This document shows, piece after piece, positions 28,022 through 45,496 of a stretch of DNA of 64,000 nt. Position 1 is the stretch's first letter. Each line of letters starts with the position of its first letter. The stretch is from IMG/VR virus record IMGVR_UViG_3300032242_000723, positions 1 through 64,000 of that record. One strand, 5' to 3'. The translations under genes were made by a program, and so were the position numbers. The notes under the pieces are model-generated. The model was not told the DNA's origin and ran no database searches. It saw only the letters and a program-made list of their open reading frames with translations.

Positions 28022-28783
28022 ATGGGCGGCAAAGCAATACCAGATTCCAATCCAGTAGACAAGAAAGATATTTCTGGAGTTCTTGCCACTGCGAAGAAAA
28101 TCATCCCTGCACAGTTACAAAAGCGTATGGCTGGCGACATTGGTTCTGCTGGTTGGAAGTTAGATCCAGCTGGGGACATTGATGTAATGATTGAAGCAGA
28201 TGATCTGGTTGATTTGTTTGATACGCGATCTAACCCAAAGGATCCTGTGTTAGCCGCAAAGAAAGAACTTGAAAAATACTTTATTGACAAAGGTATTCAA
28301 GCCAAAGTCAATGGACGCAATGTCAGCATCGGTGTCCCCTATTCAAATGGTCTCGCACAAGTAGATGTCATGGTCATACAAGATGTTAATCTCGTTGCAC
28401 CATATCATCAGCATGGACCTCGTGGTGCATACAACGATCCAAGTTTCAAGGGTCAACCAATCTTTTTACTTATGAACAGCCTAGGCAAAGCTTTAGGCTT
28501 GAAGTTTGATGCGTTCGGTGCTAAACTAATGAAACGCGATGACAATAGCGTTGTTGCCCGTGACAGAGATAGTGTTGCTAAAATATTGTTAAATCCTAAA
28601 GCAACTGGAGATGATCTAAACTCAGTGAAGAGCATCATGACCGCATTAGAGAATGACCCACAAAAAGATGCTAAGTTAGCACAGGCTCGCGATGACGAAG
28701 CAAAAGGATTGATTGAACTTACAGAATCATATACTGTAGGCAGCAACGAATGGTTTAGAAAACTATTGGATCGTATGCAATGA
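28022..28783 (+). CDS. Pol-beta-superfamily nucleotidyltransferase
   Basis: IGSAG...GDIDVMI (GS + DxD) and a downstream QVDVM third acidic residue. Confidence 0.7.
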   Translation: MGGKAIPDSNPVDKKDISGVLATAKKIIPAQLQKRMAGDIGSAGWKLDPAGDIDVMIEADDLVDLFDTRSNPKDPVLAAKKELEKYFIDKGIQAKVNGRNVSIGVPYSNGLAQVDVMVIQDVNLVAPYHQHGPRGAYNDPSFKGQPIFLLMNSLGKALGLKFDAFGAKLMKRDDNSVVARDRDSVAKILLNPKATGDDLNSVKSIMTALENDPQKDAKLAQARDDEAKGLIELTESYTVGSNEWFRKLLDRMQ

Positions 28784-29898
28784 AGATTCGTGAGATCATC
28801 ACTGAGAGTAAACGATTGAACGAAGGTGTCGGTCGTGAACTACAACATGTTGAAGACATCATATACATTGATGGCCCAGAAGCAGCATTGGAAGTCGTTA
28901 ATCGTTTAGCACAACTTGGTCAAGATTCCAAAACAATGACTATCAAGTGGGACGGAAGTCCTGCTGTGGTGTTTGGTCGTGATGATAGTGGTCAATTCCA
29001 CTTCGGTGATAAACACTCCAAAGAGATGATTACCTCACCCGATGCTATTGCTCAGCTTGTTATGAGCCGTGCTTACAAGGGCAAGGGTGACCCTCAAGTA
29101 GATGCCGATAGAAAGAAGTTCGCAGCATCACAATCACACATTTGGAAGTTATACGAAGCAGCAACACCAAAAGACTTTCGTGGATTTGTCACAGGTGATT
29201 TAATGTGGCAACAAACACCTGAGGTAGTCGGGAACGAGCTAGCTATAGCACCTAACACAGTTCAATACTTTGTTAATCGGTCTACTCCGCTTGGTCAAAA
29301 AATGGCTCGTAGTAAGTCAGGTGTAGCATTACACTTCTACTCTAAGGTCTTTGGTGGAGAAACACAGTCAATCACCCCAGATATTCTTAATCGTCTTGGC
29401 TCAAATGATGTAATCGTATTAGGTCCGAAATCTGTAGCAGAAGCACAAGCTAAGGTAAACACTAAAGAACTTGAAATGCTTGCCGCAACTATCAAGAAGT
29501 CAGCAAAGATAGTCAATGATTATCTGGCACCAATACCTGGTTTGTCTAATATAGCTAATGATATTTACACCTATACTAACTCTAATGCTGACGTGTTAGA
29601 TTCAAAGCACTTCATGGAATGGGCATCTACTAAGTTTACAAGTAAGAAGATGGCTAACTTAGAAGCTAAGGGAACACAGGGACTTGATGCAATATTCAAC
29701 ATCATGCGTCAGTTCATGAAAGTCAAAGTAGATATCATTAATCAGTTAGAAGGTCCTGGTCTAGGTGGAATGGGTATTCGTGCTGTATTGAAGAAGACTG
29801 GTGACAAGGGTGGAGAAGGTTTAGTTGATACCGGATCAGATCAGCCATTGAAGTTTGTTAACCGTGCGACCTTCTCTAAAGCAAACAGGATGCGATAA
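28780..29898 (+). CDS. Ligase/nucleotidyltransferase-like protein with a capsid-targeting-like N-terminus
   Basis: MKIREIITE|S; motif I-like TIKWDGSPA; GDLMW; GEGLV...KFVNR. Confidence 0.6.
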   Translation: MKIREIITESKRLNEGVGRELQHVEDIIYIDGPEAALEVVNRLAQLGQDSKTMTIKWDGSPAVVFGRDDSGQFHFGDKHSKEMITSPDAIAQLVMSRAYKGKGDPQVDADRKKFAASQSHIWKLYEAATPKDFRGFVTGDLMWQQTPEVVGNELAIAPNTVQYFVNRSTPLGQKMARSKSGVALHFYSKVFGGETQSITPDILNRLGSNDVIVLGPKSVAEAQAKVNTKELEMLAATIKKSAKIVNDYLAPIPGLSNIANDIYTYTNSNADVLDSKHFMEWASTKFTSKKMANLEAKGTQGLDAIFNIMRQFMKVKVDIINQLEGPGLGGMGIRAVLKKTGDKGGEGLVDTGSDQPLKFVNRATFSKANRMR

Positions 29899-29905
29899 AT
29901 AAGAC

Positions 29906-31609
29906 ATGAACGTTATAGCAGTATATCCAGGAAGATTTCACCCTTTTCACAAGGGCCATGCAGCTAGCTTTAAGCAGTTGGCAGAGAAGTTTGGCTTGAA
30001 GAATACATATCTTGCTATCTCATCTAAACAAGACCAACCAAAGAGTCCATTCTCAGCACAAGATCGTGCTAAAATGGCAACAGCCTTAGGTATTCCTCCA
30101 AAGAACATTATAGCAGTTAGTAATCCATACTCTGCAAATGAATATATCGCAAAGGTTGAAAATGACGGCGGCGATGTTAACAATACCGCATTGGTCTTTG
30201 GGGTAAGTAAGAAAGACATGGAGGGCGATCCTGCAATGGGAATCGCACCCGATCCTAGATTCTCATTCAAAAATAAAAAAGATGGTTCTGCTTCCTATAT
30301 GCAACCATACTCACAAAAAGCGATGCAAACACCTGCTCCTATGACAAAACATGGATACATAATGTCAACCGATGTTGCAGAGTTTCCTATTGCGGGCCAA
30401 ACTATGCGTGATGCAAGCGCGATTCGTCAGGCATATGCAGGTGCTGACATTAAGAAAAAGATGAAAATTCTTACTGACCTATATGGAGATAAAGCAGAAA
30501 CTATGAAACCTACATTTGATAATAACTTACAAATCACCGAGAATGTTCGCAGACTCGTTGCTGCTATCAAGCCAATGATCAGTGAAGCAACCCCTGCTCA
30601 AAAGGCAAAGTTCGTTCAACTGTTAAGCGAAGCTAAGCAGCGTCTTGATCCCGCATGCTGGTCAGGCAAGCATAAAGAAGGCACAAAGATGAAGGGAGGT
30701 CGTCGGGTCAACAACTGTGTATCTAATGAGAGCATTGAAGAATCTAATCCAAATCTACATCGTCGCTTTGATTCAAAAACACTAGACACTCTTTATCAAG
30801 CACAAGCATATGGCAGAGAAGTAGCTGATTTAAATAAGGCTAAAAAAGCAGAACGAGCTAAAGAGCGTGGGACCACAAACGCTCCGTCCATAGAGATAGC
30901 ATCAACTACGGTACCTGAAGCAGTTATCGATGGTTATATCAAAAATAGAAAAATAGGAACTGATTTCCTTCTTAGAAGGTTTGCAGGCAAGCAGACGGTA
31001 GAATTCCAAACTGAACTGGCTAATGACCCTGAATTCCAAGAATTAGTCGCTAATTTTTTCAACGTAGCAGCATCTAAAAAAGACAATGAGGTGTTTTCTA
31101 CCCGCTACTCAAACAAAGCATACCGAAGACACGCTACCGCAGATGAAAAATTAAATGAATTTGATGCAGTTGATAAGTTAGCAAAATTTGTTTTGAAGTA
31201 TATGAAAAAGTACGGTGTTGACAGAACAGGGCGTAGAGTACCTCTGAATTTTAAGTACAGCTTAGGTGAGGACCTAGAAAGCCGGACCTCAAATAATCCT
31301 CAAGGTATTCCTGAAAGCACAAAAAAGCCAACTCACAAGAATCGCAGAGATATGACTATCGTCCGTGATTTAGGCGACAACTATTATCTATCAAGAGATG
31401 AGCAAGAAGACGACGATAAGTCCTATGTTGATTACGCAGTTTGGACTAAGGTTCCAGATGCCGATGAGATGTACACTTTGGTTAACTTTGTCAATGTAAG
31501 ACCTCGTGCAACTCGTGAAATGTTTTATGACACAATCGATAAGATTATTGCAGCCGATAAAGCTGAAAATAATGTATCTGAAAGTAACGATTATCTACCA
31601 GAAAAATAA
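29906..31609 (+). CDS. HxGH (cytidylyl/adenylyl) transferase fused to xxE-bounded modules
   Basis: VYPGRFHPFHKGH N-terminus; then QITE|, MISE|, LLSE|, a CWSG...NNCV module and a C-terminal ESNDYLPEK. Confidence 0.75.
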   Translation: MNVIAVYPGRFHPFHKGHAASFKQLAEKFGLKNTYLAISSKQDQPKSPFSAQDRAKMATALGIPPKNIIAVSNPYSANEYIAKVENDGGDVNNTALVFGVSKKDMEGDPAMGIAPDPRFSFKNKKDGSASYMQPYSQKAMQTPAPMTKHGYIMSTDVAEFPIAGQTMRDASAIRQAYAGADIKKKMKILTDLYGDKAETMKPTFDNNLQITENVRRLVAAIKPMISEATPAQKAKFVQLLSEAKQRLDPACWSGKHKEGTKMKGGRRVNNCVSNESIEESNPNLHRRFDSKTLDTLYQAQAYGREVADLNKAKKAERAKERGTTNAPSIEIASTTVPEAVIDGYIKNRKIGTDFLLRRFAGKQTVEFQTELANDPEFQELVANFFNVAASKKDNEVFSTRYSNKAYRRHATADEKLNEFDAVDKLAKFVLKYMKKYGVDRTGRRVPLNFKYSLGEDLESRTSNNPQGIPESTKKPTHKNRRDMTIVRDLGDNYYLSRDEQEDDDKSYVDYAVWTKVPDADEMYTLVNFVNVRPRATREMFYDTIDKIIAADKAENNVSESNDYLPEK

Positions 31610-32598: not shown

Positions 32599-32625
32599 AA
32601 GCCCCGTAACTGGGGCTTTTCTTTT
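32599..32625 (+). terminator. Rho-independent terminator
   Basis: AAGCCCC-gtaact-GGGGCTT followed by TTCTTTT. Confidence 0.85.
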
Positions 32626-32675
32626 GTCCAAAAACCTCTATAGAGATAAATACACTATAACAATGGATTCCATCG

Positions 32676-34286
32676 ATGAAAATCAATGACATTTGCGAAA
32701 GCACTACATCAGGTTCAGTTGCAACAGTAGCACAACCAATGACCGGTGGACCACAAAGACGGTCTAATATCGGAACTGGTATCTATCCTGCTAAGCAAGG
32801 CGAAAACTTGTTGATTGGCAAAAAAACTAGTAAGAAGTATGCCAACTCAGTACGAGAAGCATTCGACCTTAAATTTCATGTAGTGCAACTGGCTAAAGAA
32901 CAACTTAATGAGTATTCAGTAAAGTTATTTGACCATTACAATATTAACAAGCATAACCAACGATTTAAACATTTATTGTTACAAATGCACAAGAATCATC
33001 CTATGTTAGAATCGACAGAAAGCGATGAAATTGAACACTTTGTTCAAACTATTGTGAGTTTAAATTCCAAAAAAACAGTTAAAGTTGGTGATATGTTTTC
33101 AGTATTGTCATTTATAATTAATCCAGTTTGGAAAGAAATTGAAGTTATCGGGTTTACGTCTCCTAAAGAAGTTAAAGAAATAAAATCACATTCAGATGGC
33201 TCGATAAATTATATTAGGTTTGCGGACAATGATCGATATCCACGCGTTCCTGTTGCGGCAGTAGGAAAGCACCCGACTCAGCATCCTGCATACTTCATTA
33301 ATGAAAAAGCCGCTGAACAAGCACTATTACGATTGAAATTAATATTACCTGAAACATGGGACATGGATATTAGTTCAGTTAACGATTCAAATTATAGATC
33401 AGGATTAGATGAGGATAACATGAAAATCAACGATATCTACGAAAGTAAGAGAATAAAAGAAGCACACCTAGACGAAGAAGAGTTGATCATTGTACCAGGT
33501 CAAGGTCATAACAAAAAGTCAGGCTTCATCCCGCATAAGGAAGATCGTCGCGATCATGAAGTTTCAATGGCTCGTAGTGATTTGTTCCAGGCAGCAAAGA
33601 ATGCGAAACAGACCTTTGAAATGCTTGAAGGTGTATCTGAAGATGAAGGCATCGAAGGCTGGGTCCAAGCCAAGATCACTAAAGCAGCAGACTATCTAGC
33701 CACTGTTCGTGAATATCTTGAGGGTAAACAAGTTCAAGGTATGGCAGAAGCAGGATCTAGGTCTTTCGGAGGCATTTCAACTGCAACATCAAGAGCGAAA
33801 CAAGCATCTATGTTTGTTCATGACCCAGATCGTGCAGCGACTAATTATAAAGCTAACAAGTATGATCCAGAAACTGGGCTAGGAGGATATGTTGCTCCAC
33901 ATGTTTACAATAAATCACAGGAATCAAACATTATGATTCAGTTAAATAAAAATCTTAATCCTAATAAAGCGTCACCACTGACCTTTAAGGACGAAAGTAC
34001 ACTAAGAATTACACCCAGGGTTGCACAAGAAGTATTAGATAAACTTAACGCAATGAAGCCTGTAGAAAAGCACGAAACAGTTAAAAATCTTATGATGTCA
34101 AAAGATAACTTTATCAACTTTGCAAAGGTAAAAACTGAAGGTGCTAAAGTTGATCGTATGGTCAAACATGTTGAGAAGTCTGAAGAAAAATCTGGCAAGT
34201 CAAAGAAAGAAGCTGAAAACATTGCATGGGCAACCTTGAATAAAAGAGGTTATCTAGACAATGCAAACCGCAAGAACAAAAAATAA
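32676..34286 (+). CDS. Modular putative capsid-internal polyprotein
   Basis: MKINDICE|S start, a second MKINDIYE|S at 33420, many xxE-bounded modules; GATAAATA at 32645. Confidence 0.7.
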   Translation: MKINDICESTTSGSVATVAQPMTGGPQRRSNIGTGIYPAKQGENLLIGKKTSKKYANSVREAFDLKFHVVQLAKEQLNEYSVKLFDHYNINKHNQRFKHLLLQMHKNHPMLESTESDEIEHFVQTIVSLNSKKTVKVGDMFSVLSFIINPVWKEIEVIGFTSPKEVKEIKSHSDGSINYIRFADNDRYPRVPVAAVGKHPTQHPAYFINEKAAEQALLRLKLILPETWDMDISSVNDSNYRSGLDEDNMKINDIYESKRIKEAHLDEEELIIVPGQGHNKKSGFIPHKEDRRDHEVSMARSDLFQAAKNAKQTFEMLEGVSEDEGIEGWVQAKITKAADYLATVREYLEGKQVQGMAEAGSRSFGGISTATSRAKQASMFVHDPDRAATNYKANKYDPETGLGGYVAPHVYNKSQESNIMIQLNKNLNPNKASPLTFKDESTLRITPRVAQEVLDKLNAMKPVEKHETVKNLMMSKDNFINFAKVKTEGAKVDRMVKHVEKSEEKSGKSKKEAENIAWATLNKRGYLDNANRKNKK

Positions 34287-34911: not shown

Positions 34912-34977
34912 GCTGATTGCTCCTTTAAGCATTAGAGTAGTTGGGACGGCCATCCGCGAACTACATCTTTATTTATC
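34912..34977 (-). promoter_or_regulatory. Conserved HEG leader, copy 5
   Basis: GATAAATA AAGAT GTAGTT CGC GGAT ggcc GTCC C AACTAC TCTAA TGCT taaagg AGCA ATCAGC ATG. Confidence 0.85.
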
Positions 34978-35028: not shown

Positions 35029-36861
35029 ATGAGTTCTATCCTCAGAGGAATACTACAAGAGAATAGCAAACGCACTGTAAAGAGTGTTGCCGATGAGATC
35101 GCAAGTTACATCGGAGATAGTCCTAGTGATTCTGCTATCGTTGATGCCGTTGAACATGAAGCAAAGATACATGGGTTCGATCCTTCAAAACTCTTTGATG
35201 CAGTATATGATCACTTTAGACATCACATTGATGAGAATCTTCATAAGTGGTTCAAAGAAAAATGGGTAAGATTTGGTCCTGATGGCAAGATTCGCGGTGA
35301 CTGTGCAAGAGGCAGTAGTAGCGAAGGTAAGCCTAAATGTTTGCCACAAGCAAAAGCACATTCTATCGGCAAAAAAGGTCGTAAGTATGCAGGTGCTAAA
35401 AAGCGTAGAGAAGATCCAAATCCAGATCGTTCGGGCCCTGCGAAGAATGTAGCCACTAAAAAGAAAACAAACGAAGATAAAAAGCCAGAGTTCATGAAGT
35501 CAGGCAACATGAAACCATTAACTGCGTCTGGTAAAGAAGTACCAGGTAGTGTTGCTAAACTAGAAAAACTACTGTTGAAGGCAAAAGAAAAAGGTATCAA
35601 GTTAGACGATTATGATACTATAAACGAGATTATGGAATTTGTTAGCAAAAAGCATCATATAACCGGAGATGAACTGCATAACCAATTTGTTGCTAAACAT
35701 CATATGATTCCAGACAAGTGGATAGCAAAACAAAAATTAGATGAAAAGTGGAGTGCGAAATACAAGAGTAGCATCAATTGCTCGCATCCAAAAGGCTTCA
35801 GTCAAAAGGCTCATTGTGCTGGCAAAAAGAAACACAATGAAAGCATAGAGATGGAGATGGTATGCGAAGATTGTGGTATGTGCGAAACTCACGGGGACCA
35901 TACTCGCGATACATTGGACGAGGCCTGCTGGAAAGGCTATCACAAAAAGGGTATGAAGACAATGTTTGGTAAGAAATATCCTAACTGTGTAAAGAATACT
36001 AACGAAGAGCAAGATGTAACAGAAGAAAAATGTCCAGAGTGCGGTGGTCCAATGTATCATGAATCAATGATCAATGAAAAGCAAGATGCTTGCTATCGTA
36101 AAGTGAAGTCACGCTATAAAGTCTGGCCAAGTGCTTATGCATCTGGTGCATTAGTTCAGTGCCGTAAAAAGGGTGCAGCAAACTGGGGCAACGGTGGAAA
36201 AAAAAATGAGAGTTCCATCATGAAGGGTCTTGTTGACGAAGCCGCGAATCCCGCTCAACAGGCTGCTATTGCTATCAATATGAAAAAGCACGGTAAGAAG
36301 CCAACGGATGTTGATGAGGCTAGACAAGAACAAGGCCAGCGTAGATATAAAGCAAAGCCTGCTGGTCAGCTTGACGAAGCCAGCATGTATGATGTCGTTG
36401 GTCCGTTGATTCGCGAGTTCAATCTTGAGCACGGTGGAAGTGAAAGATGGTCGCACATAGTGCCTCTTCATTCTGTGGCAAGCACAAAGCGTTGGAGACG
36501 AGGCGATGGTAGTTATTATACTGATCCAAACTCTATTGAGGCATTTGATCAAAGTAATCCTGAACAAAGACAACTACAAAGCGAGTTCTATGATTGGTTG
36601 ATTCAAAAGCCAGGAGTTAAAAACATTGGTGAGGTTAGTGGTGAGTTTAGGACAGATCGTTACGCAGAGGCTGCAAAATACAAGGGTGTGATCTTTGTAA
36701 AGCGTGGTTACGCTACACAATATTTCACTCCTAGCAAACTGCGTAACTCAAATGTTTGGGACAAAAAGAATGATAACAGTCTGAAAAAAGCTCCTAAACA
36801 ACAAAATACTACCTGGGAACCACTTAGTGATAGTTCTATCATGAAGGGCCTATCTAGATAA
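35029..36861 (+). CDS. Multi-module putative capsid-internal polyprotein
   Basis: About 12 xxE sites delimit short basic, Cys/His-containing modules; SSI(M/L)(K/R)G(L/I) motif occurs three times; GATAAATA at 34986. Confidence 0.7.
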   Translation: MSSILRGILQENSKRTVKSVADEIASYIGDSPSDSAIVDAVEHEAKIHGFDPSKLFDAVYDHFRHHIDENLHKWFKEKWVRFGPDGKIRGDCARGSSSEGKPKCLPQAKAHSIGKKGRKYAGAKKRREDPNPDRSGPAKNVATKKKTNEDKKPEFMKSGNMKPLTASGKEVPGSVAKLEKLLLKAKEKGIKLDDYDTINEIMEFVSKKHHITGDELHNQFVAKHHMIPDKWIAKQKLDEKWSAKYKSSINCSHPKGFSQKAHCAGKKKHNESIEMEMVCEDCGMCETHGDHTRDTLDEACWKGYHKKGMKTMFGKKYPNCVKNTNEEQDVTEEKCPECGGPMYHESMINEKQDACYRKVKSRYKVWPSAYASGALVQCRKKGAANWGNGGKKNESSIMKGLVDEAANPAQQAAIAINMKKHGKKPTDVDEARQEQGQRRYKAKPAGQLDEASMYDVVGPLIREFNLEHGGSERWSHIVPLHSVASTKRWRRGDGSYYTDPNSIEAFDQSNPEQRQLQSEFYDWLIQKPGVKNIGEVSGEFRTDRYAEAAKYKGVIFVKRGYATQYFTPSKLRNSNVWDKKNDNSLKKAPKQQNTTWEPLSDSSIMKGLSR

Positions 36862-38129
36862 TGAGATTCCGTGAGTTCCTGATAGAGTATAGTAGAGCCA
36901 AAACCGCTGAAATGGTTGGGGATAAACTCATCTTGGCCTTAGGTAATGAACGGCGTCCTCCTGTGAATCTAACAAGTATACGAGATTCAATAAAAATGGG
37001 CCCTAGCTGGTGGAACGCTGATCCTGATAGGATGAAGATTTGGACTGATGCTATTCTCGGTGCCATTGAAGATAAAGACCCAACCCCTAACAAGGCATAT
37101 ACTCCCTGGTTAGCAAGAATGTATGCCAAAGGTGGCCTCAAGCTGGAAGACATCAATCGCAATGACTTACTTGGTCTATATGACATTGCCAAAAAGCGTA
37201 GAATGCTTAAGCCAGAACACAATGACATCAACAGTTTCAAAACCTATAAAGATTTTGAAGATATGTTGCTAATCGGTGGTCATTATAACCTTGATGATAT
37301 CCAAAACAGTAATAAAAAAGAAGAAAAAGGCCAGGCATCTAAAGTATATGAAGACAGTGATGTAGTTGTTATTGTACCACAAGACGAAGCAGCCGCATGT
37401 CGTTATGGCCGTGGTACTCGTTGGTGTACTGCTTCTACAAGAGGTCAAAACTATTTTGACCATTATAATCGTCAGGGTAGAATGTATATCTTGCTCCCGA
37501 AAAACCCAGAACACGAAGGTGAGAAGTATCAACTTCACTTCCAATCACAACAGTATATGAACGAGGATGATGACCAGGTTAACTTAGTAAATCTAATCAG
37601 TAAGCGTTTTCCAAATCTTCTTGAGTTCTTTTTGGCTATACCAAACTCTGGTCTCAAAGGTGATCTTAGATTTACTGACCCAGAAGTTATCCAGGATGTA
37701 TTAGATAAGATAAGAGAAGTTGGCAATGACTGGATAAGTGAAAAGGTTAATGACGCGGAAGCCGATGATTACGACTATTACCACGAAATGGCTGAACGAT
37801 ACCCTGATCCTGATGAAGAAGGTAGTGTTGATTGGGATGCTGTTCATAAAGCAGGAGATGATTACCTGCAATATAATGATTATTTGAAAGAACTAGTAGA
37901 CGGGTTAACTACTGTATTAGAGACATCCGTAGATGATATAAAAGAATATGTCAATGACGAGCCCTTTGCCGGTCTTGACAGTTTTGAAATCAGAAATATC
38001 CCGAATATTATAGAAGAGATAGCATTATATAGTCACTATGGTTATAAGAAAAATACAATGTTCACTGAGTTCTTTAAACATCTTGATGTTGTTCGCAAAG
38101 GCGACGAATGGCAGGCAAGAGCAATATGA
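36861..38129 (+). CDS. PcfJ-like-domain protein with a capsid-targeting-like N-terminus
   Basis: MRFREFLIE|Y; YTPWLARMY; VIVPQDEAAACRYGRGTRWCTAS...YFDHY...KYQLHF. Confidence 0.6.
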   Translation: MRFREFLIEYSRAKTAEMVGDKLILALGNERRPPVNLTSIRDSIKMGPSWWNADPDRMKIWTDAILGAIEDKDPTPNKAYTPWLARMYAKGGLKLEDINRNDLLGLYDIAKKRRMLKPEHNDINSFKTYKDFEDMLLIGGHYNLDDIQNSNKKEEKGQASKVYEDSDVVVIVPQDEAAACRYGRGTRWCTASTRGQNYFDHYNRQGRMYILLPKNPEHEGEKYQLHFQSQQYMNEDDDQVNLVNLISKRFPNLLEFFLAIPNSGLKGDLRFTDPEVIQDVLDKIREVGNDWISEKVNDAEADDYDYYHEMAERYPDPDEEGSVDWDAVHKAGDDYLQYNDYLKELVDGLTTVLETSVDDIKEYVNDEPFAGLDSFEIRNIPNIIEEIALYSHYGYKKNTMFTEFFKHLDVVRKGDEWQARAI

Positions 38130-38968
38130 GAGCAAACGAGTTCATAACCGAGTCCACACCAACAAGACTTAAAGACCTATGCACAGTGAAGACTAACTTT
38201 CCGGATGCTGACTTCTGGCTACAACGCAATGGTAATGAGACTACAGTTGGTACACCAGTCAAGACATTCTCTCCAGACAACATTGGAATCAAAGTCACAG
38301 CCACCGAAGTATTAGATCCAAAATATCTATACTATATGATGATGCATATTCAAAACACAGGTTACTGGAAAGCAAGAGCAAAGGGGGCATTAAGCCTTGT
38401 TCATATCAAAGCAAGTGATGTTGCTAATATGTTAGTTGGTAGTAACTCAGTAGAAGAAAGCAGTGGTCTGCCTTCACCAGGTACATATGAACAAGAGTAT
38501 GGTCGTTTCCAGAGTAAAGGACCCAAGCGTCTTACTGCGATGACAAACGAGGCATTGGATTCTAAGCCATATGAGTACACTACTCAAATATCTGACGATT
38601 ACCATATGTATAAGTTCAATACTGATAATAACCTAAAATATGACACTTGCATATCTATAATAGGCGGCGAACGACAATCCGGAATTGAAGTTGAGTTCAA
38701 CCTGTTGATGGATGGCGACAGATATATTGGTATTCAAAACACGGGTGATGCTCGTAGAGTACTTGCTACTGTCATTGATATCATCAAGAAGTATGCTATT
38801 GAAAATAAGCCAAGATGGATTGCATTCACCGCTAGGGAGCGTAGTAGGATCCAACTATATGATGCATTGGTCAAGAGATTAGACAGAGAACTACCCGACT
38901 ATGAGTTAAAGTCAGATGTGATGCGATGGTCTGGTAAAAAATATATACTGAAACTGAAGGAAAAATAA
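38126..38968 (+). CDS. Modular putative capsid cargo; N-terminal module resembles a Type I HsdS TRD fragment
   Basis: MRANEFITE|S; LKDLCTVKT...VLDPKYLYYMM...G...LVHIK..DV; C-terminal TGDARRVLATV...IAFTA..RSRIQLY module. Confidence 0.55.
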   Translation: MRANEFITESTPTRLKDLCTVKTNFPDADFWLQRNGNETTVGTPVKTFSPDNIGIKVTATEVLDPKYLYYMMMHIQNTGYWKARAKGALSLVHIKASDVANMLVGSNSVEESSGLPSPGTYEQEYGRFQSKGPKRLTAMTNEALDSKPYEYTTQISDDYHMYKFNTDNNLKYDTCISIIGGERQSGIEVEFNLLMDGDRYIGIQNTGDARRVLATVIDIIKKYAIENKPRWIAFTARERSRIQLYDALVKRLDRELPDYELKSDVMRWSGKKYILKLKEK

Positions 38969-39204: not shown

Positions 39205-39796
39205 CCCAGTCATTGACCATACTTATGCGTTTCTTAAAAAGTCCTCTTACTTTTTGTATATTGATGTTATATTGTGTAGCAAAGTTAAGAGGGGTACAGT
39301 TGACCTCTTCACCAGTAACAGTATTCTTAAAATGATACTCAGTTCTGTTGTACCGAGAATTGTTTGACCCTGATTGATCTCTCTTGTTGAAGCTGGCCGC
39401 ATGTTCTGGAGGAAAGAACCGTCCCTTTCTCCACCCAATTGGTATTTCATCGTCCTGTTGTATCTTTTTGTTAGAGATGTCGTTAGTTATCCAAATCGTG
39501 CCATACATCGGATTTCTTTCACCTGTATTAGACAACTTAGCCAACCGCGACTTTTCTTCTGGTGAAATTTGCATCCGCCCCGCCATTATGAGGCATGCTT
39601 TATGATCGCCCTGTTCAAAATGAATGGCATAATGTTCTTTGATTGTTACACAGATTAGATTAGACAACTCGTTGTTGTTATGATTCCCATCTACATGATG
39701 GATTTCGTATGAGCGGCCTTCCTCGTCTTTAGGAATAGGTCCGAAATGATTCTCATATATTAAACGATGGTACTGGGTGCCGCAATAAATACACAT
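39194..39796 (-). CDS. Free-standing HNH homing endonuclease (HEG6)
   Basis: True start MCIYCGT at 39796; YEIHHVDGNHNNNELSNL; NPMYG..WITN...GWRKGR tail. Confidence 0.88.
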   Translation of the reverse strand: MCIYCGTQYHRLIYENHFGPIPKDEEGRSYEIHHVDGNHNNNELSNLICVTIKEHYAIHFEQGDHKACLIMAGRMQISPEEKSRLAKLSNTGERNPMYGTIWITNDISNKKIQQDDEIPIGWRKGRFFPPEHAASFNKRDQSGSNNSRYNRTEYHFKNTVTGEEVNCTPLNFATQYNINIQKVRGLFKKRISMVNDWVIA

Positions 39797-39864
39797 GCTG
39801 ATTGCTCCTTTAAGCATTAGAGTAGTTGGAGATTACCGTCTCGCGAACTACATCTGTATTTATC
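39797..39864 (-). promoter_or_regulatory. Conserved HEG leader, copy 6
   Basis: GATAAATA CAGAT GTAGTT CGC GAGA cggtaa TCTC C AACTAC TCTAA TGCT taaagg AGCA ATCAGC ATG. Confidence 0.85.
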
Positions 39865-39901
39865 TCTAAGAGATAAATACACTATACAAGGATACACATC
39901 T

Positions 39902-40342
39902 ATGCTCGCAGACAACTTGAAAGTACTACTGGGATCCACTTTCGCACTTTATACTAAAGTTCATGGTTTTCACTTCAATATAGAGGGAAGCGATTTCCCG
40001 CAATATCATGCGTTTTTCGGGGACTTCTATTCTGAAGTGTACGAAACTATTGATGAGATAGGTGAATATATCAGGTCATTAGATTCTTACTCACCAGGAA
40101 GTTTAGCACGGATGTTAGAGTTGAGCATCGTTGAAGAACAGTATAAGATTCCAAGAGCCGAACTTATGTTAGCAGAGTTGTTAGAAGATGTTGGCAAGAT
40201 GACCTCTCTTGTTACTGACATATTTGATGTTGCCACAAATGAGAGGGCACAAGGAATAGCCAACTACCTAGCAGAGTTACAGGATTTATATACTAAAAAA
40301 GCGTGGATGCTACGCAGCATCTTAAAATCACAAAGAGCGTAA
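39902..40342 (+). CDS. dps: Dps/ferritin-like protein
   Basis: KVHGFHFNIEGSDFPQYHAFFGDFY...DEIGEYIR...K.AWML; GATAAATA at 39872. Confidence 0.88.
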   Translation: MLADNLKVLLGSTFALYTKVHGFHFNIEGSDFPQYHAFFGDFYSEVYETIDEIGEYIRSLDSYSPGSLARMLELSIVEEQYKIPRAELMLAELLEDVGKMTSLVTDIFDVATNERAQGIANYLAELQDLYTKKAWMLRSILKSQRA

Positions 40343-41400: not shown

Positions 41401-42975
41401 ATGAAACTTCGTAGAAAAATCACAGAAGCAAATATTGCTCCCAAAATACTAGCCGATCCTAGACAAACGAAAATGCTGGCTCTGGCAATGAGACATGATG
41501 AGACTATACCAAGACATAAAATCGCAAGATTAGGTCCCAGGGCAACAGACGCGGAATATGTTCAACTATGGAGTGAGATGCTAGATCAATCACTAGCAGA
41601 CACTAAGTATGGTGACTTGTCAAGAGACAATAAGTTTGATGCATGGTTAACACGATTATATCTAAATCATACTGCTAACTACGAAGATGTTAACGGTGAA
41701 GCTGGTGACGCATTAGGAGCGTGGAAGGCACTTAGCATTCGTGATTTATTAGAACCAAATGACCAAGACTTTAATAGGTTCACATCTCTTAATCAAATCC
41801 AGAAAATGGTTCGCAAACCTAAATATGCTAGAGAACTAAAAAGAATAGCAGATCAGGAAGTAATAGAAAAAGCCAAAAGAGATTCTAAACAGATTACTCT
41901 CATTGATGATGACCGTTTCAAAGTAGATGTTCCTCTTAATACTGGTTCATGCTATGTGTTTAACACTGCTGAAGGTGTAGACGCAACATATTGTACTGGT
42001 GCTAGCAGCCGTGAAACCTACTTCCCACAGTATTCTAGAAATGGACCAATCGTTCAAATCCTTGACAAGAAGAATATGAATGATGTAAAGGGCAAGTGGC
42101 AGATGCACACTGCTTCTAGCCAGCTTAAGCAAGCAGACCAAAGAAATCCTCAGGGGTCCGCAGCAGATAAAGAGTTTGCTGAGTTATTTCCTGGATTGAT
42201 GAAGAGAATCGCCAAAGAGTTAAACAGTAAGTCCGAAGAGTTAAAGACAAAATCTAGCGATATGGATATCGCTCGTGGTGGATGGAACATCGCGGAAGAA
42301 GTTTCACGCATCAAGTCAAAATACCCAGCTGCATATAATAGCAAGGCTGAGGGTGAAGAAGACGATGATGATGACATCTCACCAGGTCGTGCTTGGAAGA
42401 TATTACGATCGGGTAACTATACTGGCGAGACAGTTCGGGCCCCTGATCAGTCTGCTGCAATGCAAAAAGTGATTCGTAAGGTGCAGGCAAAACTTCCTAA
42501 TAATAGTGTTGGAGCTATCAACGCAATATACAGTGTAGAACCGTTACATGCCGATAGTGAATGGGCTATCGTAATCAATGGAACTACCAAAGAAGACGAG
42601 ATTATACGGGCCGGTACTGAATCAGAGGCTACCGAGTTGATGGTTCGTAGAGTTAAACAACTGTTTCCAAATGCTGATGAACAAACCATCAGAGAGCGAT
42701 GCGGTGTTTACCTTCGTGATGCTGGTCCGGCGAGACCAGCTGCTGCACAACAGGTTGCCGCACAGGATCGGGCACCTATACCTGCCGAAGATGAACCAGA
42801 GCAACAAGGTGACCAAAATCGTCAGTGGGAAGTAACTGACACCAGAACTGGTCGTAGGTTGGGAATAATATACAATGCACCGACCGCTATGTCGGCATTT
42901 GCTCAAATGCTTCAGGATCGTCGAATCGATTATGATCCTGAAAGATTTACAATGGTTCCGTACGAACCAAGATAA
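41401..42975 (+). CDS. Second PcfJ-like protein with extra modules
   Basis: MKLRRKITE|A; FDAWLTRLY; VDVPLNTGSC...YCTGAS...YFPQY...KWQMH; paralogous to 36861. Confidence 0.55.
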   Translation: MKLRRKITEANIAPKILADPRQTKMLALAMRHDETIPRHKIARLGPRATDAEYVQLWSEMLDQSLADTKYGDLSRDNKFDAWLTRLYLNHTANYEDVNGEAGDALGAWKALSIRDLLEPNDQDFNRFTSLNQIQKMVRKPKYARELKRIADQEVIEKAKRDSKQITLIDDDRFKVDVPLNTGSCYVFNTAEGVDATYCTGASSRETYFPQYSRNGPIVQILDKKNMNDVKGKWQMHTASSQLKQADQRNPQGSAADKEFAELFPGLMKRIAKELNSKSEELKTKSSDMDIARGGWNIAEEVSRIKSKYPAAYNSKAEGEEDDDDDISPGRAWKILRSGNYTGETVRAPDQSAAMQKVIRKVQAKLPNNSVGAINAIYSVEPLHADSEWAIVINGTTKEDEIIRAGTESEATELMVRRVKQLFPNADEQTIRERCGVYLRDAGPARPAAAQQVAAQDRAPIPAEDEPEQQGDQNRQWEVTDTRTGRRLGIIYNAPTAMSAFAQMLQDRRIDYDPERFTMVPYEPR

Positions 42976-43145
42976 TGGATATATCTGAACTCAAAAGACT
43001 TGCTGGTATAACAGATCACCGTGGTATGAGTACTGTCTCAGAACCCGTTAACCATGTCATATCTCGTCCTGGTACTGAAGAATGGTTCAAGCGTCCAGTG
43101 AATGACATGCAGATGCCAGCAGGTTTCAGAGGCCGCAAGAAATGA
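42975..43145 (+). CDS. Small peptide (56 aa, below the ORF-track cutoff)
   Basis: MDISELKRLAGITD...PGTEEWFKRP...GFRGRKK; coupled at both ends (TAATG, ATGA). Confidence 0.7.
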   Translation: MDISELKRLAGITDHRGMSTVSEPVNHVISRPGTEEWFKRPVNDMQMPAGFRGRKK

Positions 43146-44440
43146 GAGCGAATGAGTTCATAGTTGAAACTGATCTAGGCTTGTTAGAAGGCAAGAAGTT
43201 TCACAAGCTAAACTTAGAATCAATAGAAAAAAGATTCGGTGAAATTCATCTCGGCGGCGGAACCACATTAAAAAATCAAAAACTAATCAATTTCCTACAC
43301 AAAGCAAATCAACCGGAAAAAGTTTATGAATATATTTTGGTACAAAAGTTAGCCAAATTAAATGGTTCTACTTTGAACGAAAGCATTGATAGTACTGACG
43401 AAAATCTAAATCATTTGTTTGACAGATTTAACTCTTGCTCTTCTGGAAACAAGGTTAAAGTAGGTGATGATATTGCTGTACTTGAACTAGAAGCCATGCA
43501 TATTGGAAACGCATACAGTATAGAGTTGAGTGGATTTCTAAATCCTAAGGAAGTTATCGCTGCTGACAACAGATACATAAAAGTTATATCTGGCGAAACT
43601 TATCCTAGAATTAAAATAGAACAACTAAGTATGTGGAGGCAAGTAATCTTCTTTGATAGTAAAGAAAATGCTGAAAAATGCCTAACTTACATGAGTTTAT
43701 TATCTGGTAAATTGGGGGATTGGGATTTGTCTATTAATGTCCAACAAGATGCTACGGAAGGATTAGATGAAGGCTGGAAAGAAAAGGCCAAAGGTCTTGC
43801 AGCCGCCGGTGCTATCGCTTTCGCTGGTCAGGCCATCATGCCAAAAACTATTGAACCATCTCCTTACTCTGCTAGTGATTATCAACTGCCAAGAGTTACT
43901 CAAGAGATATTACAAAAAGTTAATGCTGCTATCCATACTCCACTTGCACTTGCACTAAGAAGAGAAGCATTTGTTGCAGGCATTGAAGGTGCAGAGTTAG
44001 CACAACTTATTGCACAATGCGCCCACGAGACTCAGAACTTTATGTCACTTGTTGAACACGGTGGAAGTCTTGACTTTAGACAATATGACATACGATACAA
44101 TCCACAGAAAGCCAAAATATTAGGCAACACTCAGCCAGGTGACGGTGCTCGGTATCATGGTCGCGGCTTCATTCAGTTGACTGGTCGTTATAACTACAAG
44201 AAAGCCGGAGAAGCCTTAGGTCTTCCACTTGAATCTCGTCCTGAACTATTAGAACGTCCTGATGTCGCGGCTAAGGTCGCAGTATGGTATTGGCAGAATA
44301 GAGTAGCACCTAAGGTTGATAACTTCAAAGACACTCGTGCTGTTACTAAGCCGATCAACTCTGGCCTCAGTGGGTTAAAAGATAGAGAAGACAAGTTCAA
44401 CGCTATTATGCAGATATTAAGCACACCGGTGACAAGATAA
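43142..44440 (+). CDS. Putative virion-borne GH19 muramidase polyprotein
   Basis: MRANEFIVE|T; after GLDE| a TM/signal-like AAAGAIAFAG segment; then AQCAHETQNF, RYHGRGFIQLTGRYNY, TKPINSG. Confidence 0.8.
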   Translation: MRANEFIVETDLGLLEGKKFHKLNLESIEKRFGEIHLGGGTTLKNQKLINFLHKANQPEKVYEYILVQKLAKLNGSTLNESIDSTDENLNHLFDRFNSCSSGNKVKVGDDIAVLELEAMHIGNAYSIELSGFLNPKEVIAADNRYIKVISGETYPRIKIEQLSMWRQVIFFDSKENAEKCLTYMSLLSGKLGDWDLSINVQQDATEGLDEGWKEKAKGLAAAGAIAFAGQAIMPKTIEPSPYSASDYQLPRVTQEILQKVNAAIHTPLALALRREAFVAGIEGAELAQLIAQCAHETQNFMSLVEHGGSLDFRQYDIRYNPQKAKILGNTQPGDGARYHGRGFIQLTGRYNYKKAGEALGLPLESRPELLERPDVAAKVAVWYWQNRVAPKVDNFKDTRAVTKPINSGLSGLKDREDKFNAIMQILSTPVTR

Positions 44441-44546: not shown

Positions 44547-44849
44547 ATGAAGATCAACGAATTGCTAAACGAGTCGGCTCACGACGATTGGAACGATGAA
44601 GCAGAAGAAGTCATCGACCCTGATATGGACAAGATTCCACATATCGTGATGCAGTTTAAGAAGGCTCTTGATCTCGGTGGCCGTCATCCTATCGTCTTCC
44701 AAGACGGCAACAAGACTCTTATTCCTGCTAACCTTATCCGTCAGTTCATGAGCAAGTATGCTTCACTAAAGCCTTATCAGCGTGAAGAGTTGCAAGACAT
44801 CGTGTCTAAGAGCAAAGAAGCGTTCATGAATGTGCTCGGTCAAAACTAA
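44547..44849 (+). CDS. Small protein with a capsid-targeting-like N-terminus
   Basis: MKINELLNE|S at ATG 44547, SD AAAGGA. Confidence 0.7.
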   Translation: MKINELLNESAHDDWNDEAEEVIDPDMDKIPHIVMQFKKALDLGGRHPIVFQDGNKTLIPANLIRQFMSKYASLKPYQREELQDIVSKSKEAFMNVLGQN

Positions 44850-44917
44850 ACTATTTGTTGAATGAAATGGCGGCGAGTATTTCGTCGCCATTTCCATATC
44901 CAGTGATAAATACACTT

Positions 44918-45496
44918 ATGCTCGGTGATGAAATCATATTAGAATCCGCTGTATCGGACCTCGCAAAGAAGTTACCTTCTTTAGATAAGCACGATTATGA
45001 CACCATTGACACCTTAATGCGTAAGATTGCTTCAAAGCATCATATCACTGGTAAAGCATTACACGACTTGTTTATCAAGAAGTTTGACAGAACTCCTGAT
45101 GAATGGATCAAGGATAAACTTGACGAAGATAACGGTTCTGATCTTGACTTACAGAGTGAAGTAGACAAGTTTGTGGACTGGTCAGTGAAGAGATTACATA
45201 TCAAGAATAAGCCTGCTGTAGAACTCAGCATGGATACCGAAGAAGCACAAAATAATCATCACACAGGCGGACATGTTGACGGGGAAGACAGCATTTGGGT
45301 CTATGCTAAGAATCGTAATCTTGTGGACATACTCCGCACCGTATTTCACGAACTCGTACATGTGAGACAAGGTGAGCTTAATATGATTAAGCCAGGTTCC
45401 AGCTATCCAGGCAGTCCGATTGAAGTAATGGCAGATGCCTTAGCTGGCAAGTATATCAAGATATTTGGCGAGAAGAATCACCATATCTTCCAATAG
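44918..45496 (+). CDS. Zincin-like metallopeptidase with an N-terminal shared module
   Basis: MLGDEIILE|S; LRTVFHELVHVRQ (HExxH) with downstream E..ADA.A; GATAAATA at 44905. Confidence 0.72.
   Translation: MLGDEIILESAVSDLAKKLPSLDKHDYDTIDTLMRKIASKHHITGKALHDLFIKKFDRTPDEWIKDKLDEDNGSDLDLQSEVDKFVDWSVKRLHIKNKPAVELSMDTEEAQNNHHTGGHVDGEDSIWVYAKNRNLVDILRTVFHELVHVRQGELNMIKPGSSYPGSPIEVMADALAGKYIKIFGEKNHHIFQ

What the first reader, a model, noticed from the sequence alone, without database searches (positions are those of the whole stretch)
28780..45496. Large repertoire of capsid-targeted, protease-segmented cargo polyproteins
Seen: at least nine late ORFs start with a shared signal ending in E at residue 8-11: MKIREIITE, MKINDICE, MKINDIYE (internal), MSSILRGILQE, MRFREFLIE, MRANEFITE, MKLRRKITE, MRANEFIVE, MKINELLNE and MLGDEIILE; MKRLIE at 21941 is similar. 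Internally, recognisable domains begin immediately after LDE, LNE, ITE, TNE, VDE, INE or VEE. Established: T4 internal proteins use the capsid-targeting sequence MKTYQEFIAE, and the prohead protease cuts after (I/L)xE. Inference: about 17 kb encodes a plug-in delivery platform in which unrelated effectors (ligase-like, HxGH transferase, PcfJ-like, TRD-like, muramidase, metallopeptidase, short basic peptides) are strung together, packaged, cut apart and injected. It would be a modular phage effector-delivery system much larger than T4's three internal proteins.
Basis: partly seen in the sequence, partly recalled or inferred. Interest (0 to 1): 0.8.

Follow-up and report, generated by a model that had tools for sequence, protein, structure and literature searches.

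The report
T4-type capsid-targeting leaders on modular cargo
An uncultivated 333-kb freshwater jumbo phage puts the same short T4-like head-targeting, protease-cut tag on about ten unrelated late proteins, and joins many of their modules with the same cut-site motif. This suggests that proteins packed into the capsid can be predicted from sequence alone, though no virion data exist yet.

Summary
Ten leaders of the form M-[KR]-x-x-[ED]-[FIL]-[IL]-x-E, or close variants, sit at the stated ORF starts. Three ORF starts needed correcting.

- **Enrichment.** In the window plus 79 related IMG/VR loci, 76 of 515 ORFs upstream of PolB carry the strict leader. None of 641 downstream ORFs do.
- **T4 likeness.** The leader matches T4 propeptides read from the T4 genome: IPII/IPIII MKTYQEFIAE, gp24 MAKINELLRE, gp22 MLKEQLIAE.
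- **Protein-level selection.** Synonymous codons vary freely within the leader.
- **Timing.** Leader genes lie behind a GATAAATA motif, a variant of the T4 late promoter.
- **Protease.** Related freshwater jumbo contigs encode a conserved gp21-type prohead protease within a T4-order head module.
- **Junctions.** Modules that follow a leader in one protein are preceded by [ILVMF]xE in 15 of 33 internal contexts, against a 2% background.
- **Second element.** SSI[LM]xG[IL] follows either the start Met or an E in 19 of 21 contexts.

Not all 17 kb is cargo. The protease was not found in the source genome itself. Packaging, cleavage and injection are inferred. I rate it a new variant of the T4 CTS/gp21 system combined with polyvalent-protein architecture.

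The parts
27991..27998 (+). GATAAATA late-promoter-like motif upstream of the 28022-28780-29906 unit
   Evidence: 15 copies in the window against 3.5 expected, nearly all intergenic and just upstream of genes, including the tail-fibre-like gene at 13398. T4 late promoter is TATAAATA (established knowledge). Relatives use T/G/A-ATAAATA upstream of head genes.
28780..29898 (+). Leader MKIREIITE (28780-28806) plus a second LNE site, then a DUF6267 ligase-like nucleotidyltransferase
   Evidence: Pfam DUF6267, 3e-25. AF2 model pLDDT 92 with residues 1-17 disordered. Top fold hits are DNA/RNA ligases, but weak. KxDG is invariant. Most metagenomic homologues start with MRAFEFLTE-type leaders.
29906..31609 (+). 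No leader. HxGH cytidylyl/adenylyltransferase-like N-domain, then small modules separated by xxE; own GATAAATA at 29894
   Evidence: Pfam CTP_transf_like 4e-10 and NCBIfam TIGR00125. The Cys module at residues 245-275 is shared with 35029 and many relatives. DUF6267 and CTP_transf are fused in other phages. The Melnitz-2 homologue starts MKKFSEIIE.
32676..34286 (+). Fusion of two leader-cargo units: leader MKINDICE (32676-32699) and internal leader MKINDIYE (33420-33443); GATAAATA at 32645
   Evidence: Orthologous N-modules start MKINQIILE or MRFNQIVE. The N-module ends at VRE-62. The C-terminal 50 residues occur as stand-alone small ORFs elsewhere.
35029..36861 (+). Best polyprotein candidate: type-2 leader MSSILRGILQE (35029-35061), then about 12 small basic or Cys-rich modules each ending x[DN]E. 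SSIMKGL elements lie at 36211-36231 (internal) and 36832-36852 (C-terminal). GATAAATA at 34986
   Evidence: Site list. The module at residues 70-149 is always preceded by xDE/xSE, and is followed by xNE/xDE/xSE only when it is internal. Modules match several separate PHROGs, including an 81-residue stand-alone family. [ILVM]xE z = 3.3.
36861..38129 (+). Leader MRFREFLIE (36861-36887) plus a 410-residue cargo of unknown function; paralogue of 41401
   Evidence: The core (residues 62-241) is 31% identical to Pseudomonas phage PA5oct gp205, annotated as a structural protein by ESI-MS/MS, whose N-terminus is MKLFEVFTLYE. PcfJ similarity is only a weak lead.
38126..38968 (+). Leader MRANEFITE (38126-38152), an N-module, a junction at VEE-111, then DUF6934
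   Evidence: Pfam DUF6934 2.3e-8. The N-module is internal in L015, where it is preceded by RIDE. The module boundary is at about residues 111-117.
41401..42975 (+). Degenerate leader MKLRRKITE (41401-41427) plus cargo related to 36861
   Evidence: The orthologue in L023 starts MIIKDIINE followed by AN, as the window protein does. Paralogy with 36861 is shown.
42975..43145 (+). 56-residue ORF starting MDISELKRLAGI, which resembles the conserved C-terminus of the scaffold protein
   Evidence: Scaffold C-terminus NILDIRKLAGLK is seen 102 times at C-termini in protease loci. Three N-terminal copies are this ORF family. PA5oct virion protein gp203 starts MFNINDILRLAGV. Its role is speculative.
43142..44440 (+). 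Leader MRANEFIVE (43142-43168), an N-module shared with 32676, a junction at LDE-210, a hydrophobic stretch, then a GH19 lysozyme-like domain
   Evidence: Pfam Glyco_hydro_19 3.5e-11, PHROG endolysin 5.7e-41. A second, leaderless GH19 gene lies at 9330-9959.
44547..44849 (+). Leader MKINELLNE (44547-44573) plus a 91-residue acidic protein conserved at this position; GATAAATA at 44522
   Evidence: The leader is nearly identical to the T4 gp24 N-terminus MAKINELLRE.
44918..45496 (+). Degenerate leader MLGDEIILE (44918-44944), a helical module ending KLDE, then a minimal zinc metallopeptidase (HELVH); GATAAATA at 44905
   Evidence: Alignment A2: orthologues carry MRATEFITE. Some have a basic/Gly-Tyr module inserted between ITE and a second [IVM]xE. 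H144, E145 and H148 are invariant. The fold matches abylysin, selecase and Wss1 (probability 0.95-0.99).
39872..39879 (+). GATAAATA upstream of the operon 39902 (Dps/ferritin), 40347, 41401, 42975, 43142
   Evidence: The Dps gene is conserved immediately upstream of leader genes in about 20 relatives.

Best explanation
The window is the first 64 kb of an uncultivated 333-kb jumbo myovirus of the T4 superfamily. Between about 28.8 and 45.5 kb lie late operons in which about ten proteins begin with a 9-11-residue leader, consensus M-R/K-A/I-x-E/D-F-I/L-T/N-E. This leader is the counterpart of the T4 capsid-targeting sequence and propeptide.

Proposed mechanism:
1. The leader binds the scaffolding core, so the protein is built into the prohead.
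2. The gp21-type prohead serine protease cuts after the (I/L/V/M)-x-E. This frees the cargo inside the head.
3. The cargo then leaves with the DNA at infection.

Some products, most clearly that of 35029, are strings of small basic or Cys-rich modules and enzyme domains joined by the same x-x-E motif. Some junctions also carry a second excisable element, SSI[LM]xG[IL]. These products would be cut into many pieces.

Shown here: the motif, its enrichment, its T4 likeness, its selection at the peptide level, the junction pattern, the late-promoter context, and the protease in the lineage. Inferred: core binding, cleavage, packaging, ejection, and what the cargo does in the host.
For: - **Leaders.** Present and restricted to this region.
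- **Logo.** Conserved at E5, F6, I/L7 and E9, then random. These positions correspond to T4 CTS positions 6, 7, 8 and 10. Positions 7, 8 and 10 matter for targeting or processing in T4 (PMC9026906).
- **T4 sequences read directly.** IPII/IPIII MKTYQEFIAE, gp24 MAKINELLRE, gp22 MLKEQLIAE, Alt MELITELFDE. T4 gp21 removes these propeptides (PMC5694885).
- **Codons.** Synonymous codon diversity in the leader.
- **Promoter.** GATAAATA is enriched 4-fold and placed upstream of leader operons and of a tail-fibre-like gene. NATAAATA lies upstream of head genes in a relative.
- **Protease and head module.** A gp21-type protease sits in a portal, gp67-like, acidic core, protease, scaffold, MCP module in related freshwater jumbo contigs. 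Leader-bearing genes lie within that module.
- **Junction test.** 15 of 33 junctions against a 2.1% background, peaking at offset 0.
- **Junction-specific xxE.** Present when a module is internal and absent when it is C-terminal.
- **SSIL element.** Preceded by Met or E in 19 of 21 contexts.
- **Inserted module.** Flanked by ITE and [IVM]xE in alignment A2.
- **Virion evidence in a cultured phage.** The PA5oct homologue of the 36861 cargo is a virion protein by mass spectrometry.
- **Leader tracks promoter type.** The leaderless DUF6267 of cyanophage S-RSM4 lies in an early replication operon. The leader-bearing Melnitz-2 operon has TATAAATA.
Against: - No virion proteomics or cleavage data exist for this lineage.
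- The protease, MCP and late sigma factor were not recovered from the source contig itself. Only relatives were.
- Linkage of the protease loci to the PolB loci rests on shared motifs, samples and genome size, not on a shared contig.
- Bulk [ILVM]xE enrichment is modest, and the Dps gene also scores high.
- Many putative internal sites have T, H or K at P3. This departs from the T4 rule.
- Several ORFs in the region have no leader.
- T4 gp24 and gp22 show that the tag also marks structural and scaffold proteins, so a tag does not prove that a protein is ejected.
- Cultured Rak2-like head modules and the syntenic region of Sinorhizobium phage Phosso lack such a repertoire.
Confidence: 0.62

Rival explanations
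1. The leader is a T4-type propeptide, but only the N-terminal cut happens. The multi-domain proteins stay intact as polyvalent proteins, and the internal xxE motifs are linker or recombination scars rather than cleavage sites.
For: - Bulk [ILVM]xE enrichment is modest.
- Many internal sites have a non-hydrophobic P3 residue.
- Polyvalent phage proteins are usually thought to act as single chains or to self-process (PMC5512222).
- A cyanophage protein strings the same small modules together without obvious xxE boundaries.
Against: - The junction motif sits exactly at offset 0 in 15 of 33 independent junctions.
- xxE is added only when a module is internal.
- The SSIL spacer is bounded by E on its N-side in 14 of 16 non-N-terminal contexts.
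- T4 gp21 does cut gp22, gp67 and gp68 at many sites.
Confidence: 0.2
2. The tagged proteins are prohead core or scaffold accessories or shell components, like T4 gp22, gp67, gp68 and gp24. They are degraded, expelled or kept as structure, and are not delivered effectors.
For: - T4 gp24 and gp22 carry near-identical leaders.
- A leader-bearing gene lies within the head module of relatives.
- 21339 and 21941 match PHROGs annotated as virion structural proteins.
Against: Much of the cargo consists of enzyme-like domains (ligase-like, GH19, zinc peptidase) or small basic modules like the T4 internal proteins. The repertoire is highly variable between close relatives. That is typical of accessory or conflict genes rather than core structure.
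Confidence: 0.1
3. The shared N-terminus has nothing to do with the capsid. It could be a translation-initiation or mRNA feature, or a homology patch that drives cassette shuffling between genes.
For: The two leader copies in 32676 flank an inserted module, and leaders mark recombination joints. Mobile regulatory cassettes are known in T4-type phages (PMC2839356, listed).
Against: - Synonymous sites vary freely while the peptide is conserved.
- Upstream DNA differs between genes: some have a promoter, others are translationally coupled.
- The peptide matches experimentally defined T4 propeptides.
- No leader is found in 641 ORFs downstream of PolB.
Confidence: 0.05

Closest known systems
T4 capsid-targeting sequence / gp21 propeptides (IPI-III, Alt, gp24, gp22)
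   Same: A short N-terminal leader with acidic, aromatic and aliphatic residues, ending in (I/L)-x-E. It is shared by otherwise unrelated late proteins. A gp21-type protease is present in the lineage. The late promoter is of the NATAAATA type. Small basic cargo resembles the internal proteins.
   Different: - The leader is 9 residues rather than 10-19.
- About ten tagged genes occur in 17 kb of one genome, and the tag is spread over at least 11 cargo clusters in relatives.
- Cargo includes multi-module chains with internal junction sites and a second SSILxGL element.
- The host genome is a 333-kb jumbo phage.
- Nothing has been shown experimentally.
Polyvalent proteins of phages and conjugative elements (Iyer et al. 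2017, PMC5512222)
   Same: Several unrelated effector-type domains in one phage polypeptide, presumed to be packaged and delivered with the DNA. These include lysozyme and small zinc metallopeptidase domains, with rampant domain shuffling.
   Different: Here the modules are delimited by a motif that matches the prohead protease, and they carry a CTS-type leader. No MuF, ArdC or other anchor domains typical of that class were detected.
Processed ejection and inner-body proteins of phiKZ and SPN3US
   Same: Jumbo phages that pack many proteins in the head and process them after Glu with a gp21-related protease. Propeptides have multiple sites, and paralogues share N-termini (PMC13282480).
   Different: Those use S/A/G-x-E and long (over 100 residue) propeptides. 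They belong to an unrelated lineage (Chimalliviridae and relatives). Here P3 is I/L/V/M and the leader has 9-11 residues.
Phage P1 Dar system (DarA, DarB, Hdf, Ddr)
   Same: A set of anti-restriction and other proteins built into the head and injected. Some are proteolytically processed.
   Different: Incorporation in P1 depends on an ordered protein-protein hierarchy, not on a shared short leader. There is no sequence relation.

Membership tests
T4 CTS / gp21-processed head proteins | Short N-terminal propeptide ending in (L/I)-x-E and shared by unrelated proteins | tested here: met
   Ten leaders in the window; logo from 76 relatives; direct comparison with T4 IPII, IPIII, gp24, gp22 and Alt.
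T4 CTS / gp21-processed head proteins | A gp21-type prohead protease encoded by the same genome | tested here: inconclusive
   Found in Rak2-like cultured relatives and in many freshwater jumbo contigs, some from the same sample, within a T4-order head module. The source contig was not among the loci returned, and the window holds no head genes.
T4 CTS / gp21-processed head proteins | Late expression together with head genes | tested here: met
   GATAAATA occurs 15 times against 3.5 expected, upstream of leader operons and a tail-fibre-like gene. Sigma-70-like promoters lie upstream of DnaJ, PolB-proximal and replication genes. This is by sequence only; the promoter's function was not tested.
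T4 CTS / gp21-processed head proteins | Physical incorporation into proheads, removal of the leader, and ejection with the DNA | not testable with these tools
   The only indirect support is that the PA5oct homologue of one cargo is a virion protein by ESI-MS/MS.
Polyvalent proteins (Iyer et al. 2017) | Two to 15 distinct effector-type domains in one phage polypeptide, with mosaic architectures | tested here: met
   The 35029, 32676, 29906, 43142 and 44918 families show shuffled modules across relatives.
Polyvalent proteins (Iyer et al. 2017) | Signature anchor or head-association domains (MuF, ArdC-N, etc.) or the T4SS context | tested here: not met
   Pfam, PHROG and NCBIfam scans of all region proteins gave no such domain.
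phiKZ/SPN3US processed ejection proteins | Cleavage motif S/A/G-x-E and long propeptides | tested here: not met
   P3 is I/L/V/M at leaders and at 15 of 33 junctions. Leaders have 9-11 residues.

The most novel reading that the evidence does not exclude
A cosmopolitan lineage of freshwater jumbo phages, and more distantly many marine T4-like phages that carry DUF6267, uses a two-element peptide grammar. One element is an N-terminal CTS. The other is an excisable SSILxGL spacer bounded by protease sites. Together they let almost any domain be plugged in, packed into the head as a polyprotein, cut apart and delivered. If so, the injected proteome of uncultivated phages can be read directly from sequence. 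Enzymes that other phages make early, such as the ligase-like DUF6267 and its nucleotidyltransferase partner, would here be pre-loaded.
Probability: 0.35. Interest if true: 0.8.

Novelty: new variant of a known kind. Interest (0 to 1): 0.66.

Why it matters
T4 research established that a ten-residue tag is enough to load foreign proteins into a capsid and deliver them. T4 workers have suggested that the tag is an evolutionary way to pack varied proteins (PMC9026906). This locus suggests that nature uses the idea at a much larger scale in abundant uncultivated jumbo phages, and extends it to chains of modules with a recognisable cut-site grammar.

If confirmed, it would provide:
- a sequence-only predictor of packaged, probably injected proteins in metagenomes;
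- a shortlist of candidate first-minute effectors: ligase-like, nucleotidyltransferase, peptidoglycan hydrolase, zinc peptidase, and small basic DNA-associated peptides;
- new tags and linkers for phage-based protein delivery in laboratory systems.

In the literature searched, I found no description of this repertoire or of DUF6267.

Tried and rejected
- **Canonical T4 late promoter.** TATAAATA has 0 copies in the window. The G-variant took its place.
- **Nearest phage records.** Megablast of the region against phage records gave only an 89-bp hit to a cyanophage.
- **Source contig's protease.** Two IMG/VR scans returned hundreds of relatives but not that contig.
- **Synteny link.** tblastn of window proteins against the protease loci gave only a few hits, in one distant 607-kb contig.
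- **Cultured relatives.** The leader motif is essentially absent from cultured Rak2-like/CBB-like head modules and from PA5oct flanks. The syntenic Phosso region holds tail-fibre-like genes and one possible leader, MKTTKDIIFE.
- **Weak cargo labels.** Pfam gave no PcfJ hit for 36861 or 41401, and the ESM Atlas gave only a rank-28 lead.
- **Uninformative searches.** PDB sequence searches with profiles A2 and A3 found nothing significant. The cluster look-up gave no names.
- **Bulk site enrichment.** I downgraded [ILVM]xE enrichment as the main argument because it is modest and a helical Dps protein also scores high.
- **RNA-level explanation.** I rejected this because of the synonymous variation in the leader.
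- **MCP cleavage site.** The alignment of a relative's MCP to T4 gp23 begins after the cleavage region. The LAE|A site is therefore an analogy, not an aligned match.
Full report
**What the window is.** The PolB gene at 46076-48790 is 100% identical to IMGVR_UViG_3300032242_000723 (333,115 bp), and the coordinates show that the window is the first 64 kb of that contig. The closest cultured phages by PolB, at 41-48% identity, are Sinorhizobium phage Phosso, Agrobacterium phage Atu_ph07, XaC1, GAP32, CBB and 121Q/G17. These are jumbo myoviruses of the wider T4 superfamily.

The window holds these features in order:
- tail-fibre-like genes (168-15323);
- scattered HNH and GIY-YIG homing endonucleases;
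- two ORFs matching PHROGs annotated as virion structural proteins (21339, 21941);
- a holin-like gene, DnaJ, and a ClpB-like ATPase;
- the region of the finding;
- PolB and 7-deazaguanine genes.

**The observation.**
- Five ORFs start with the strict pattern M[KR]xx[DE][FILVM]xxE: 28780, 36861, 38126, 43142 and 44547.
- For three ORFs the real start is an internal Met of the longest ORF (38126, 44547, 44918). An independent gene caller chose the same starts.
- Orthologues validate the looser cases. The N-module of 32676 starts MKINQIILE, MKITQIISE or MRFNQIVE elsewhere. The 41401 orthologue starts MIIKDIINE followed by the same AN. The 44918 family usually starts MRATEFITE.
- The 32676 ORF contains a second in-frame leader at residue 249, nt 33420. 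It is therefore a fusion of two leader-cargo units.

**Is it more than chance?**
- In the window, 5 of 19 ORFs in the region carry the strict leader and 0 of 53 outside it do.
- In the window plus 79 related PolB loci, 76 of 515 ORFs in the 10 kb upstream of PolB carry the strict leader. None of 641 downstream ORFs do. The loci are related, so the p-value of about 1e-28 overstates independence. The contrast is still absolute.
- Only 17 internal matches occur in 254,270 residues.
- All matches followed by an ORF of at least 50 residues are on the coding strand.
- The logo is M, R/K, A/I, x, E/D, F, I/L, T/N, E. Conservation stops after the E.
- Synonymous codons vary freely at every conserved position, and the upstream DNA differs between genes. 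Selection therefore acts on the peptide.

**What the leader resembles.** I read the T4 sequences from NC_000866 rather than rely on memory.
- IPII and IPIII begin MKTYQEFIAE.
- gp24 begins MAKINELLRE, followed by S.
- gp22 begins MLKEQLIAE, followed by A.
- Alt begins MELITELFDE.
- gp23 contains FLTE followed by AEIGG.

The window's MKINELLNE-S and MRANEFITE-S are of the same type. In T4, gp21 removes these 10-19-residue propeptides. The first ten residues of IPIII are sufficient for head targeting. Residues 4 and 7 matter for targeting, and residues 8 and 10 for processing (PMC9026906; PMC5694885; PMC3012670). The conserved F, I/L and E of the present logo correspond to T4 positions 7, 8 and 10.

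**Late expression.** The canonical T4 late promoter TATAAATA is absent from the window. GATAAATA occurs 15 times against 3.5 expected. Nearly all copies are intergenic and lie 10-50 nt upstream of a start:
- on the plus strand, before 13398 (tail-fibre-like), 17010, 21339, 28022, 29906, 32676, 35029, 39902, 44547 and 44918;
- on the minus strand, before three homing endonuclease genes.

Many leader genes in relatives have the same motif. In a relative's head module, T/G/A-ATAAATA precedes head genes and a leader gene. Genes for DnaJ, the PolB-proximal small ORFs and replication functions instead have TTGACA-N17-TATAxT promoters. The region thus consists of about six late transcription units. 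A clear terminator lies at 32599-32618.

**The protease and head module.** T4 gp21 has homologues in the Rak2-like jumbo phages K64-1, pEa_SNUABM_47 and SD-15_S21 (alignment A1). A profile scan of IMG/VR found a very conserved gp21-type protease in hundreds of freshwater contigs. Several are 320-335 kb long, and some come from the same or sister samples as the source.

In L131 the gene order is T4-like: portal, a gp67-like small protein, an acidic core protein, the protease, the scaffold, and the major capsid protein. The capsid protein has an LAE|A site just before the conserved region, analogous to T4 LTE|A. The BLAST alignment starts downstream of it, so this is an analogy only. The head module itself contains leader-bearing genes, for example MRINELIFE on a 67-residue Cys-rich protein next to the capsid gene and MKLSDVFSE on a 237-residue protein. 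I could not retrieve the protease from the source contig itself. This is the main gap.

**Modularity and the junction grammar.** Cargo behind the leader falls into at least 11 clusters, and the largest is a mosaic of shuffled modules. I ran three comparative tests of the claim that domains begin right after xxE.
1. I took modules that directly follow the leader in one protein and found where the same module is internal in another protein. Of 33 non-redundant internal junctions, 15 have [ILVMF]-x-E exactly at P3-P1. The background is 2.1% per position, and other offsets score 0-5.
2. The module at residues 70-149 of the 35029 product is always preceded by xDE or xSE. It is followed by xNE, xDE or xSE only when another module follows. 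When it is C-terminal the protein simply ends in TKKKD.
3. In the 44918 family, a basic Gly/Tyr-rich module is inserted between the leader ITE and a second [IVM]xE. A 90-residue module is inserted directly after KLDE.

A second element, S-[SA]-I-[LM]-x-G-[IL], occurs in 21 distinct contexts. It follows the initiator Met in 5 and an E in 14. It is usually followed by another E within five residues. It also occurs as a C-terminal tail after an E. In the window it is the N-terminus of 35029 and appears twice more in that protein. It looks like an excisable spacer or a second targeting element.

Bulk enrichment is weaker. [ILVM]xE occurs 105 times against 78.7 expected in the region (z = 3.5), compared with z = 2.2 elsewhere. 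[ILVMT][DNT]E occurs 35 times against 16.3, compared with 38 against 33 elsewhere.

**The cargo.**
- **28780** is DUF6267. A 40-sequence alignment has invariant KxDG and EG motifs. The AF2 model has pLDDT 92, with the first 17 residues disordered. Its top PDB fold hits are almost all DNA or RNA ligases, but with weak scores. I therefore call it ligase-like with moderate confidence.
- **29906**, its neighbour, has an HxGH nucleotidyltransferase domain. The two domains are fused in other phages.
- **DUF6267 homologues** from very diverse metagenomic phages mostly begin MRAFEFLTE, MRYSDFKLVE or similar. Some have a small Cys module inserted between the leader and the domain. In cyanophage S-RSM4 the homologue has no leader and sits in an early replication operon. 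In Methylophilales phage Melnitz-2 the operon has leader-like starts and a TATAAATA.
- **43142** ends in a GH19 lysozyme-like domain.
- **44918** ends in a minimal zinc metallopeptidase. HExxH is invariant, and the fold matches abylysin, selecase and Wss1 with probability 0.95-0.99.
- **36861 and 41401** are paralogues of unknown function. The 36861 core is 31% identical to PA5oct gp205, a virion protein by ESI-MS/MS. 'PcfJ-like' is only a weak lead.
- **35029** consists of small basic or Cys-rich modules. These also occur strung together in a structural-region protein of cyanophage S-RS29 and as stand-alone PHROG families.

The 17 kb is not uniformly cargo. It includes two HNH genes on the minus strand (34288-34953 and 39194-39817), a Dps/ferritin gene (39902), a probable glycosyltransferase-like gene (31668), a small membrane protein (38971), and leaderless ORFs (28022, 29906, 40347). 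Clear multi-site architecture is limited to a few products. The T4 tag also marks structural and scaffold proteins, so it does not by itself prove ejection.

**Comparison with what is known.** The system works like the T4 CTS/gp21 system and meets its sequence-level criteria. It also has the architecture of polyvalent proteins (PMC5512222) but lacks their anchor domains. It differs from phiKZ and SPN3US, which use S/A/G-x-E and long propeptides. Literature searches found no description of such a repertoire in T4-superfamily jumbo phages, and no paper mentioning DUF6267.

**Verdict.** The mechanism is unproven, and the case is a new variant of a known kind.

Noticed in passing
window 27940-28000, 34955-34995, 39820-39880, 21250-21335: A conserved repeat of about 45 bp lies between each minus-strand homing endonuclease gene and the next plus-strand operon. 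It carries two divergent GATAAATA motifs, one for each direction. It looks like a mobile promoter cassette that travels with the HNH/GIY-YIG genes.
   Followed up: partly
window 12558-13277(-), 17010-17630(+), 34288-34953(-), 39194-39817(-): Four HNH_3 homing endonuclease paralogues have nearly identical N-termini (MCIYCGT..YR.IYE.H.GPIPKD). Two of them interrupt the cargo region. Likely GIY-YIG genes lie at 27311-27916(-) and 20480-21247(-).
   Followed up: no
window 42975-43145; L131:10639-11733; L219:5735-7231: The scaffold protein of the lineage ends in a very conserved NILDIRKLAGLK, seen 102 times at C-termini. The window's 56-residue ORF starts with ISELKRLAGI, and PA5oct virion protein gp203 starts with NDILRLAGV. 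This may be a shared capsid- or portal-binding peptide.
   Followed up: partly
window 1-64000: TATAAATA is completely absent (0 against 4.3 expected) while GATAAATA is enriched 4-fold. This suggests a shifted late-promoter consensus in this phage.
   Followed up: partly
window 39902-40342: A Dps/ferritin-like gene (a PHROG annotated as DNA-binding protein) heads a late operon. In about 20 relatives it is conserved immediately upstream of leader-bearing genes. It has no leader but an unusually high [ILVM]xE count (z = 3.6).
   Followed up: no
window 9330-9959 and 43142-44440: There are two GH19 lysozyme-like genes. One is leaderless and sits among the tail-fibre genes. The other has a leader and a long N-terminal extension. 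This may be a division between an endolysin and a virion-borne enzyme.
   Followed up: no
window 53839-56919: GTP cyclohydrolase I, QueD-like and QueE-like genes lie downstream of PolB, in synteny with Phosso. This suggests 7-deazaguanine modification of the DNA.
   Followed up: no
window 23072-26163: The phage encodes a DnaJ and a 755-residue ClpB/ClpA-like ATPase behind a sigma-70-like promoter. A Clp-family ATPase sits at the same relative position in Phosso.
   Followed up: no
window 59631-60092: This ORF has a run of about 17 prolines near its N-terminus (MFKAIKDWIS, then poly-P).
   Followed up: no
L152:8162-8788, L131:9995-10624: The lineage protease itself starts M-K-x-S-Y-L-R-E. That gives an LRE site at residue 8, parallel to the LIE-9 site noted near the N-terminus of T4 gp21. 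It suggests the protease trims its own N-terminus.
   Followed up: no
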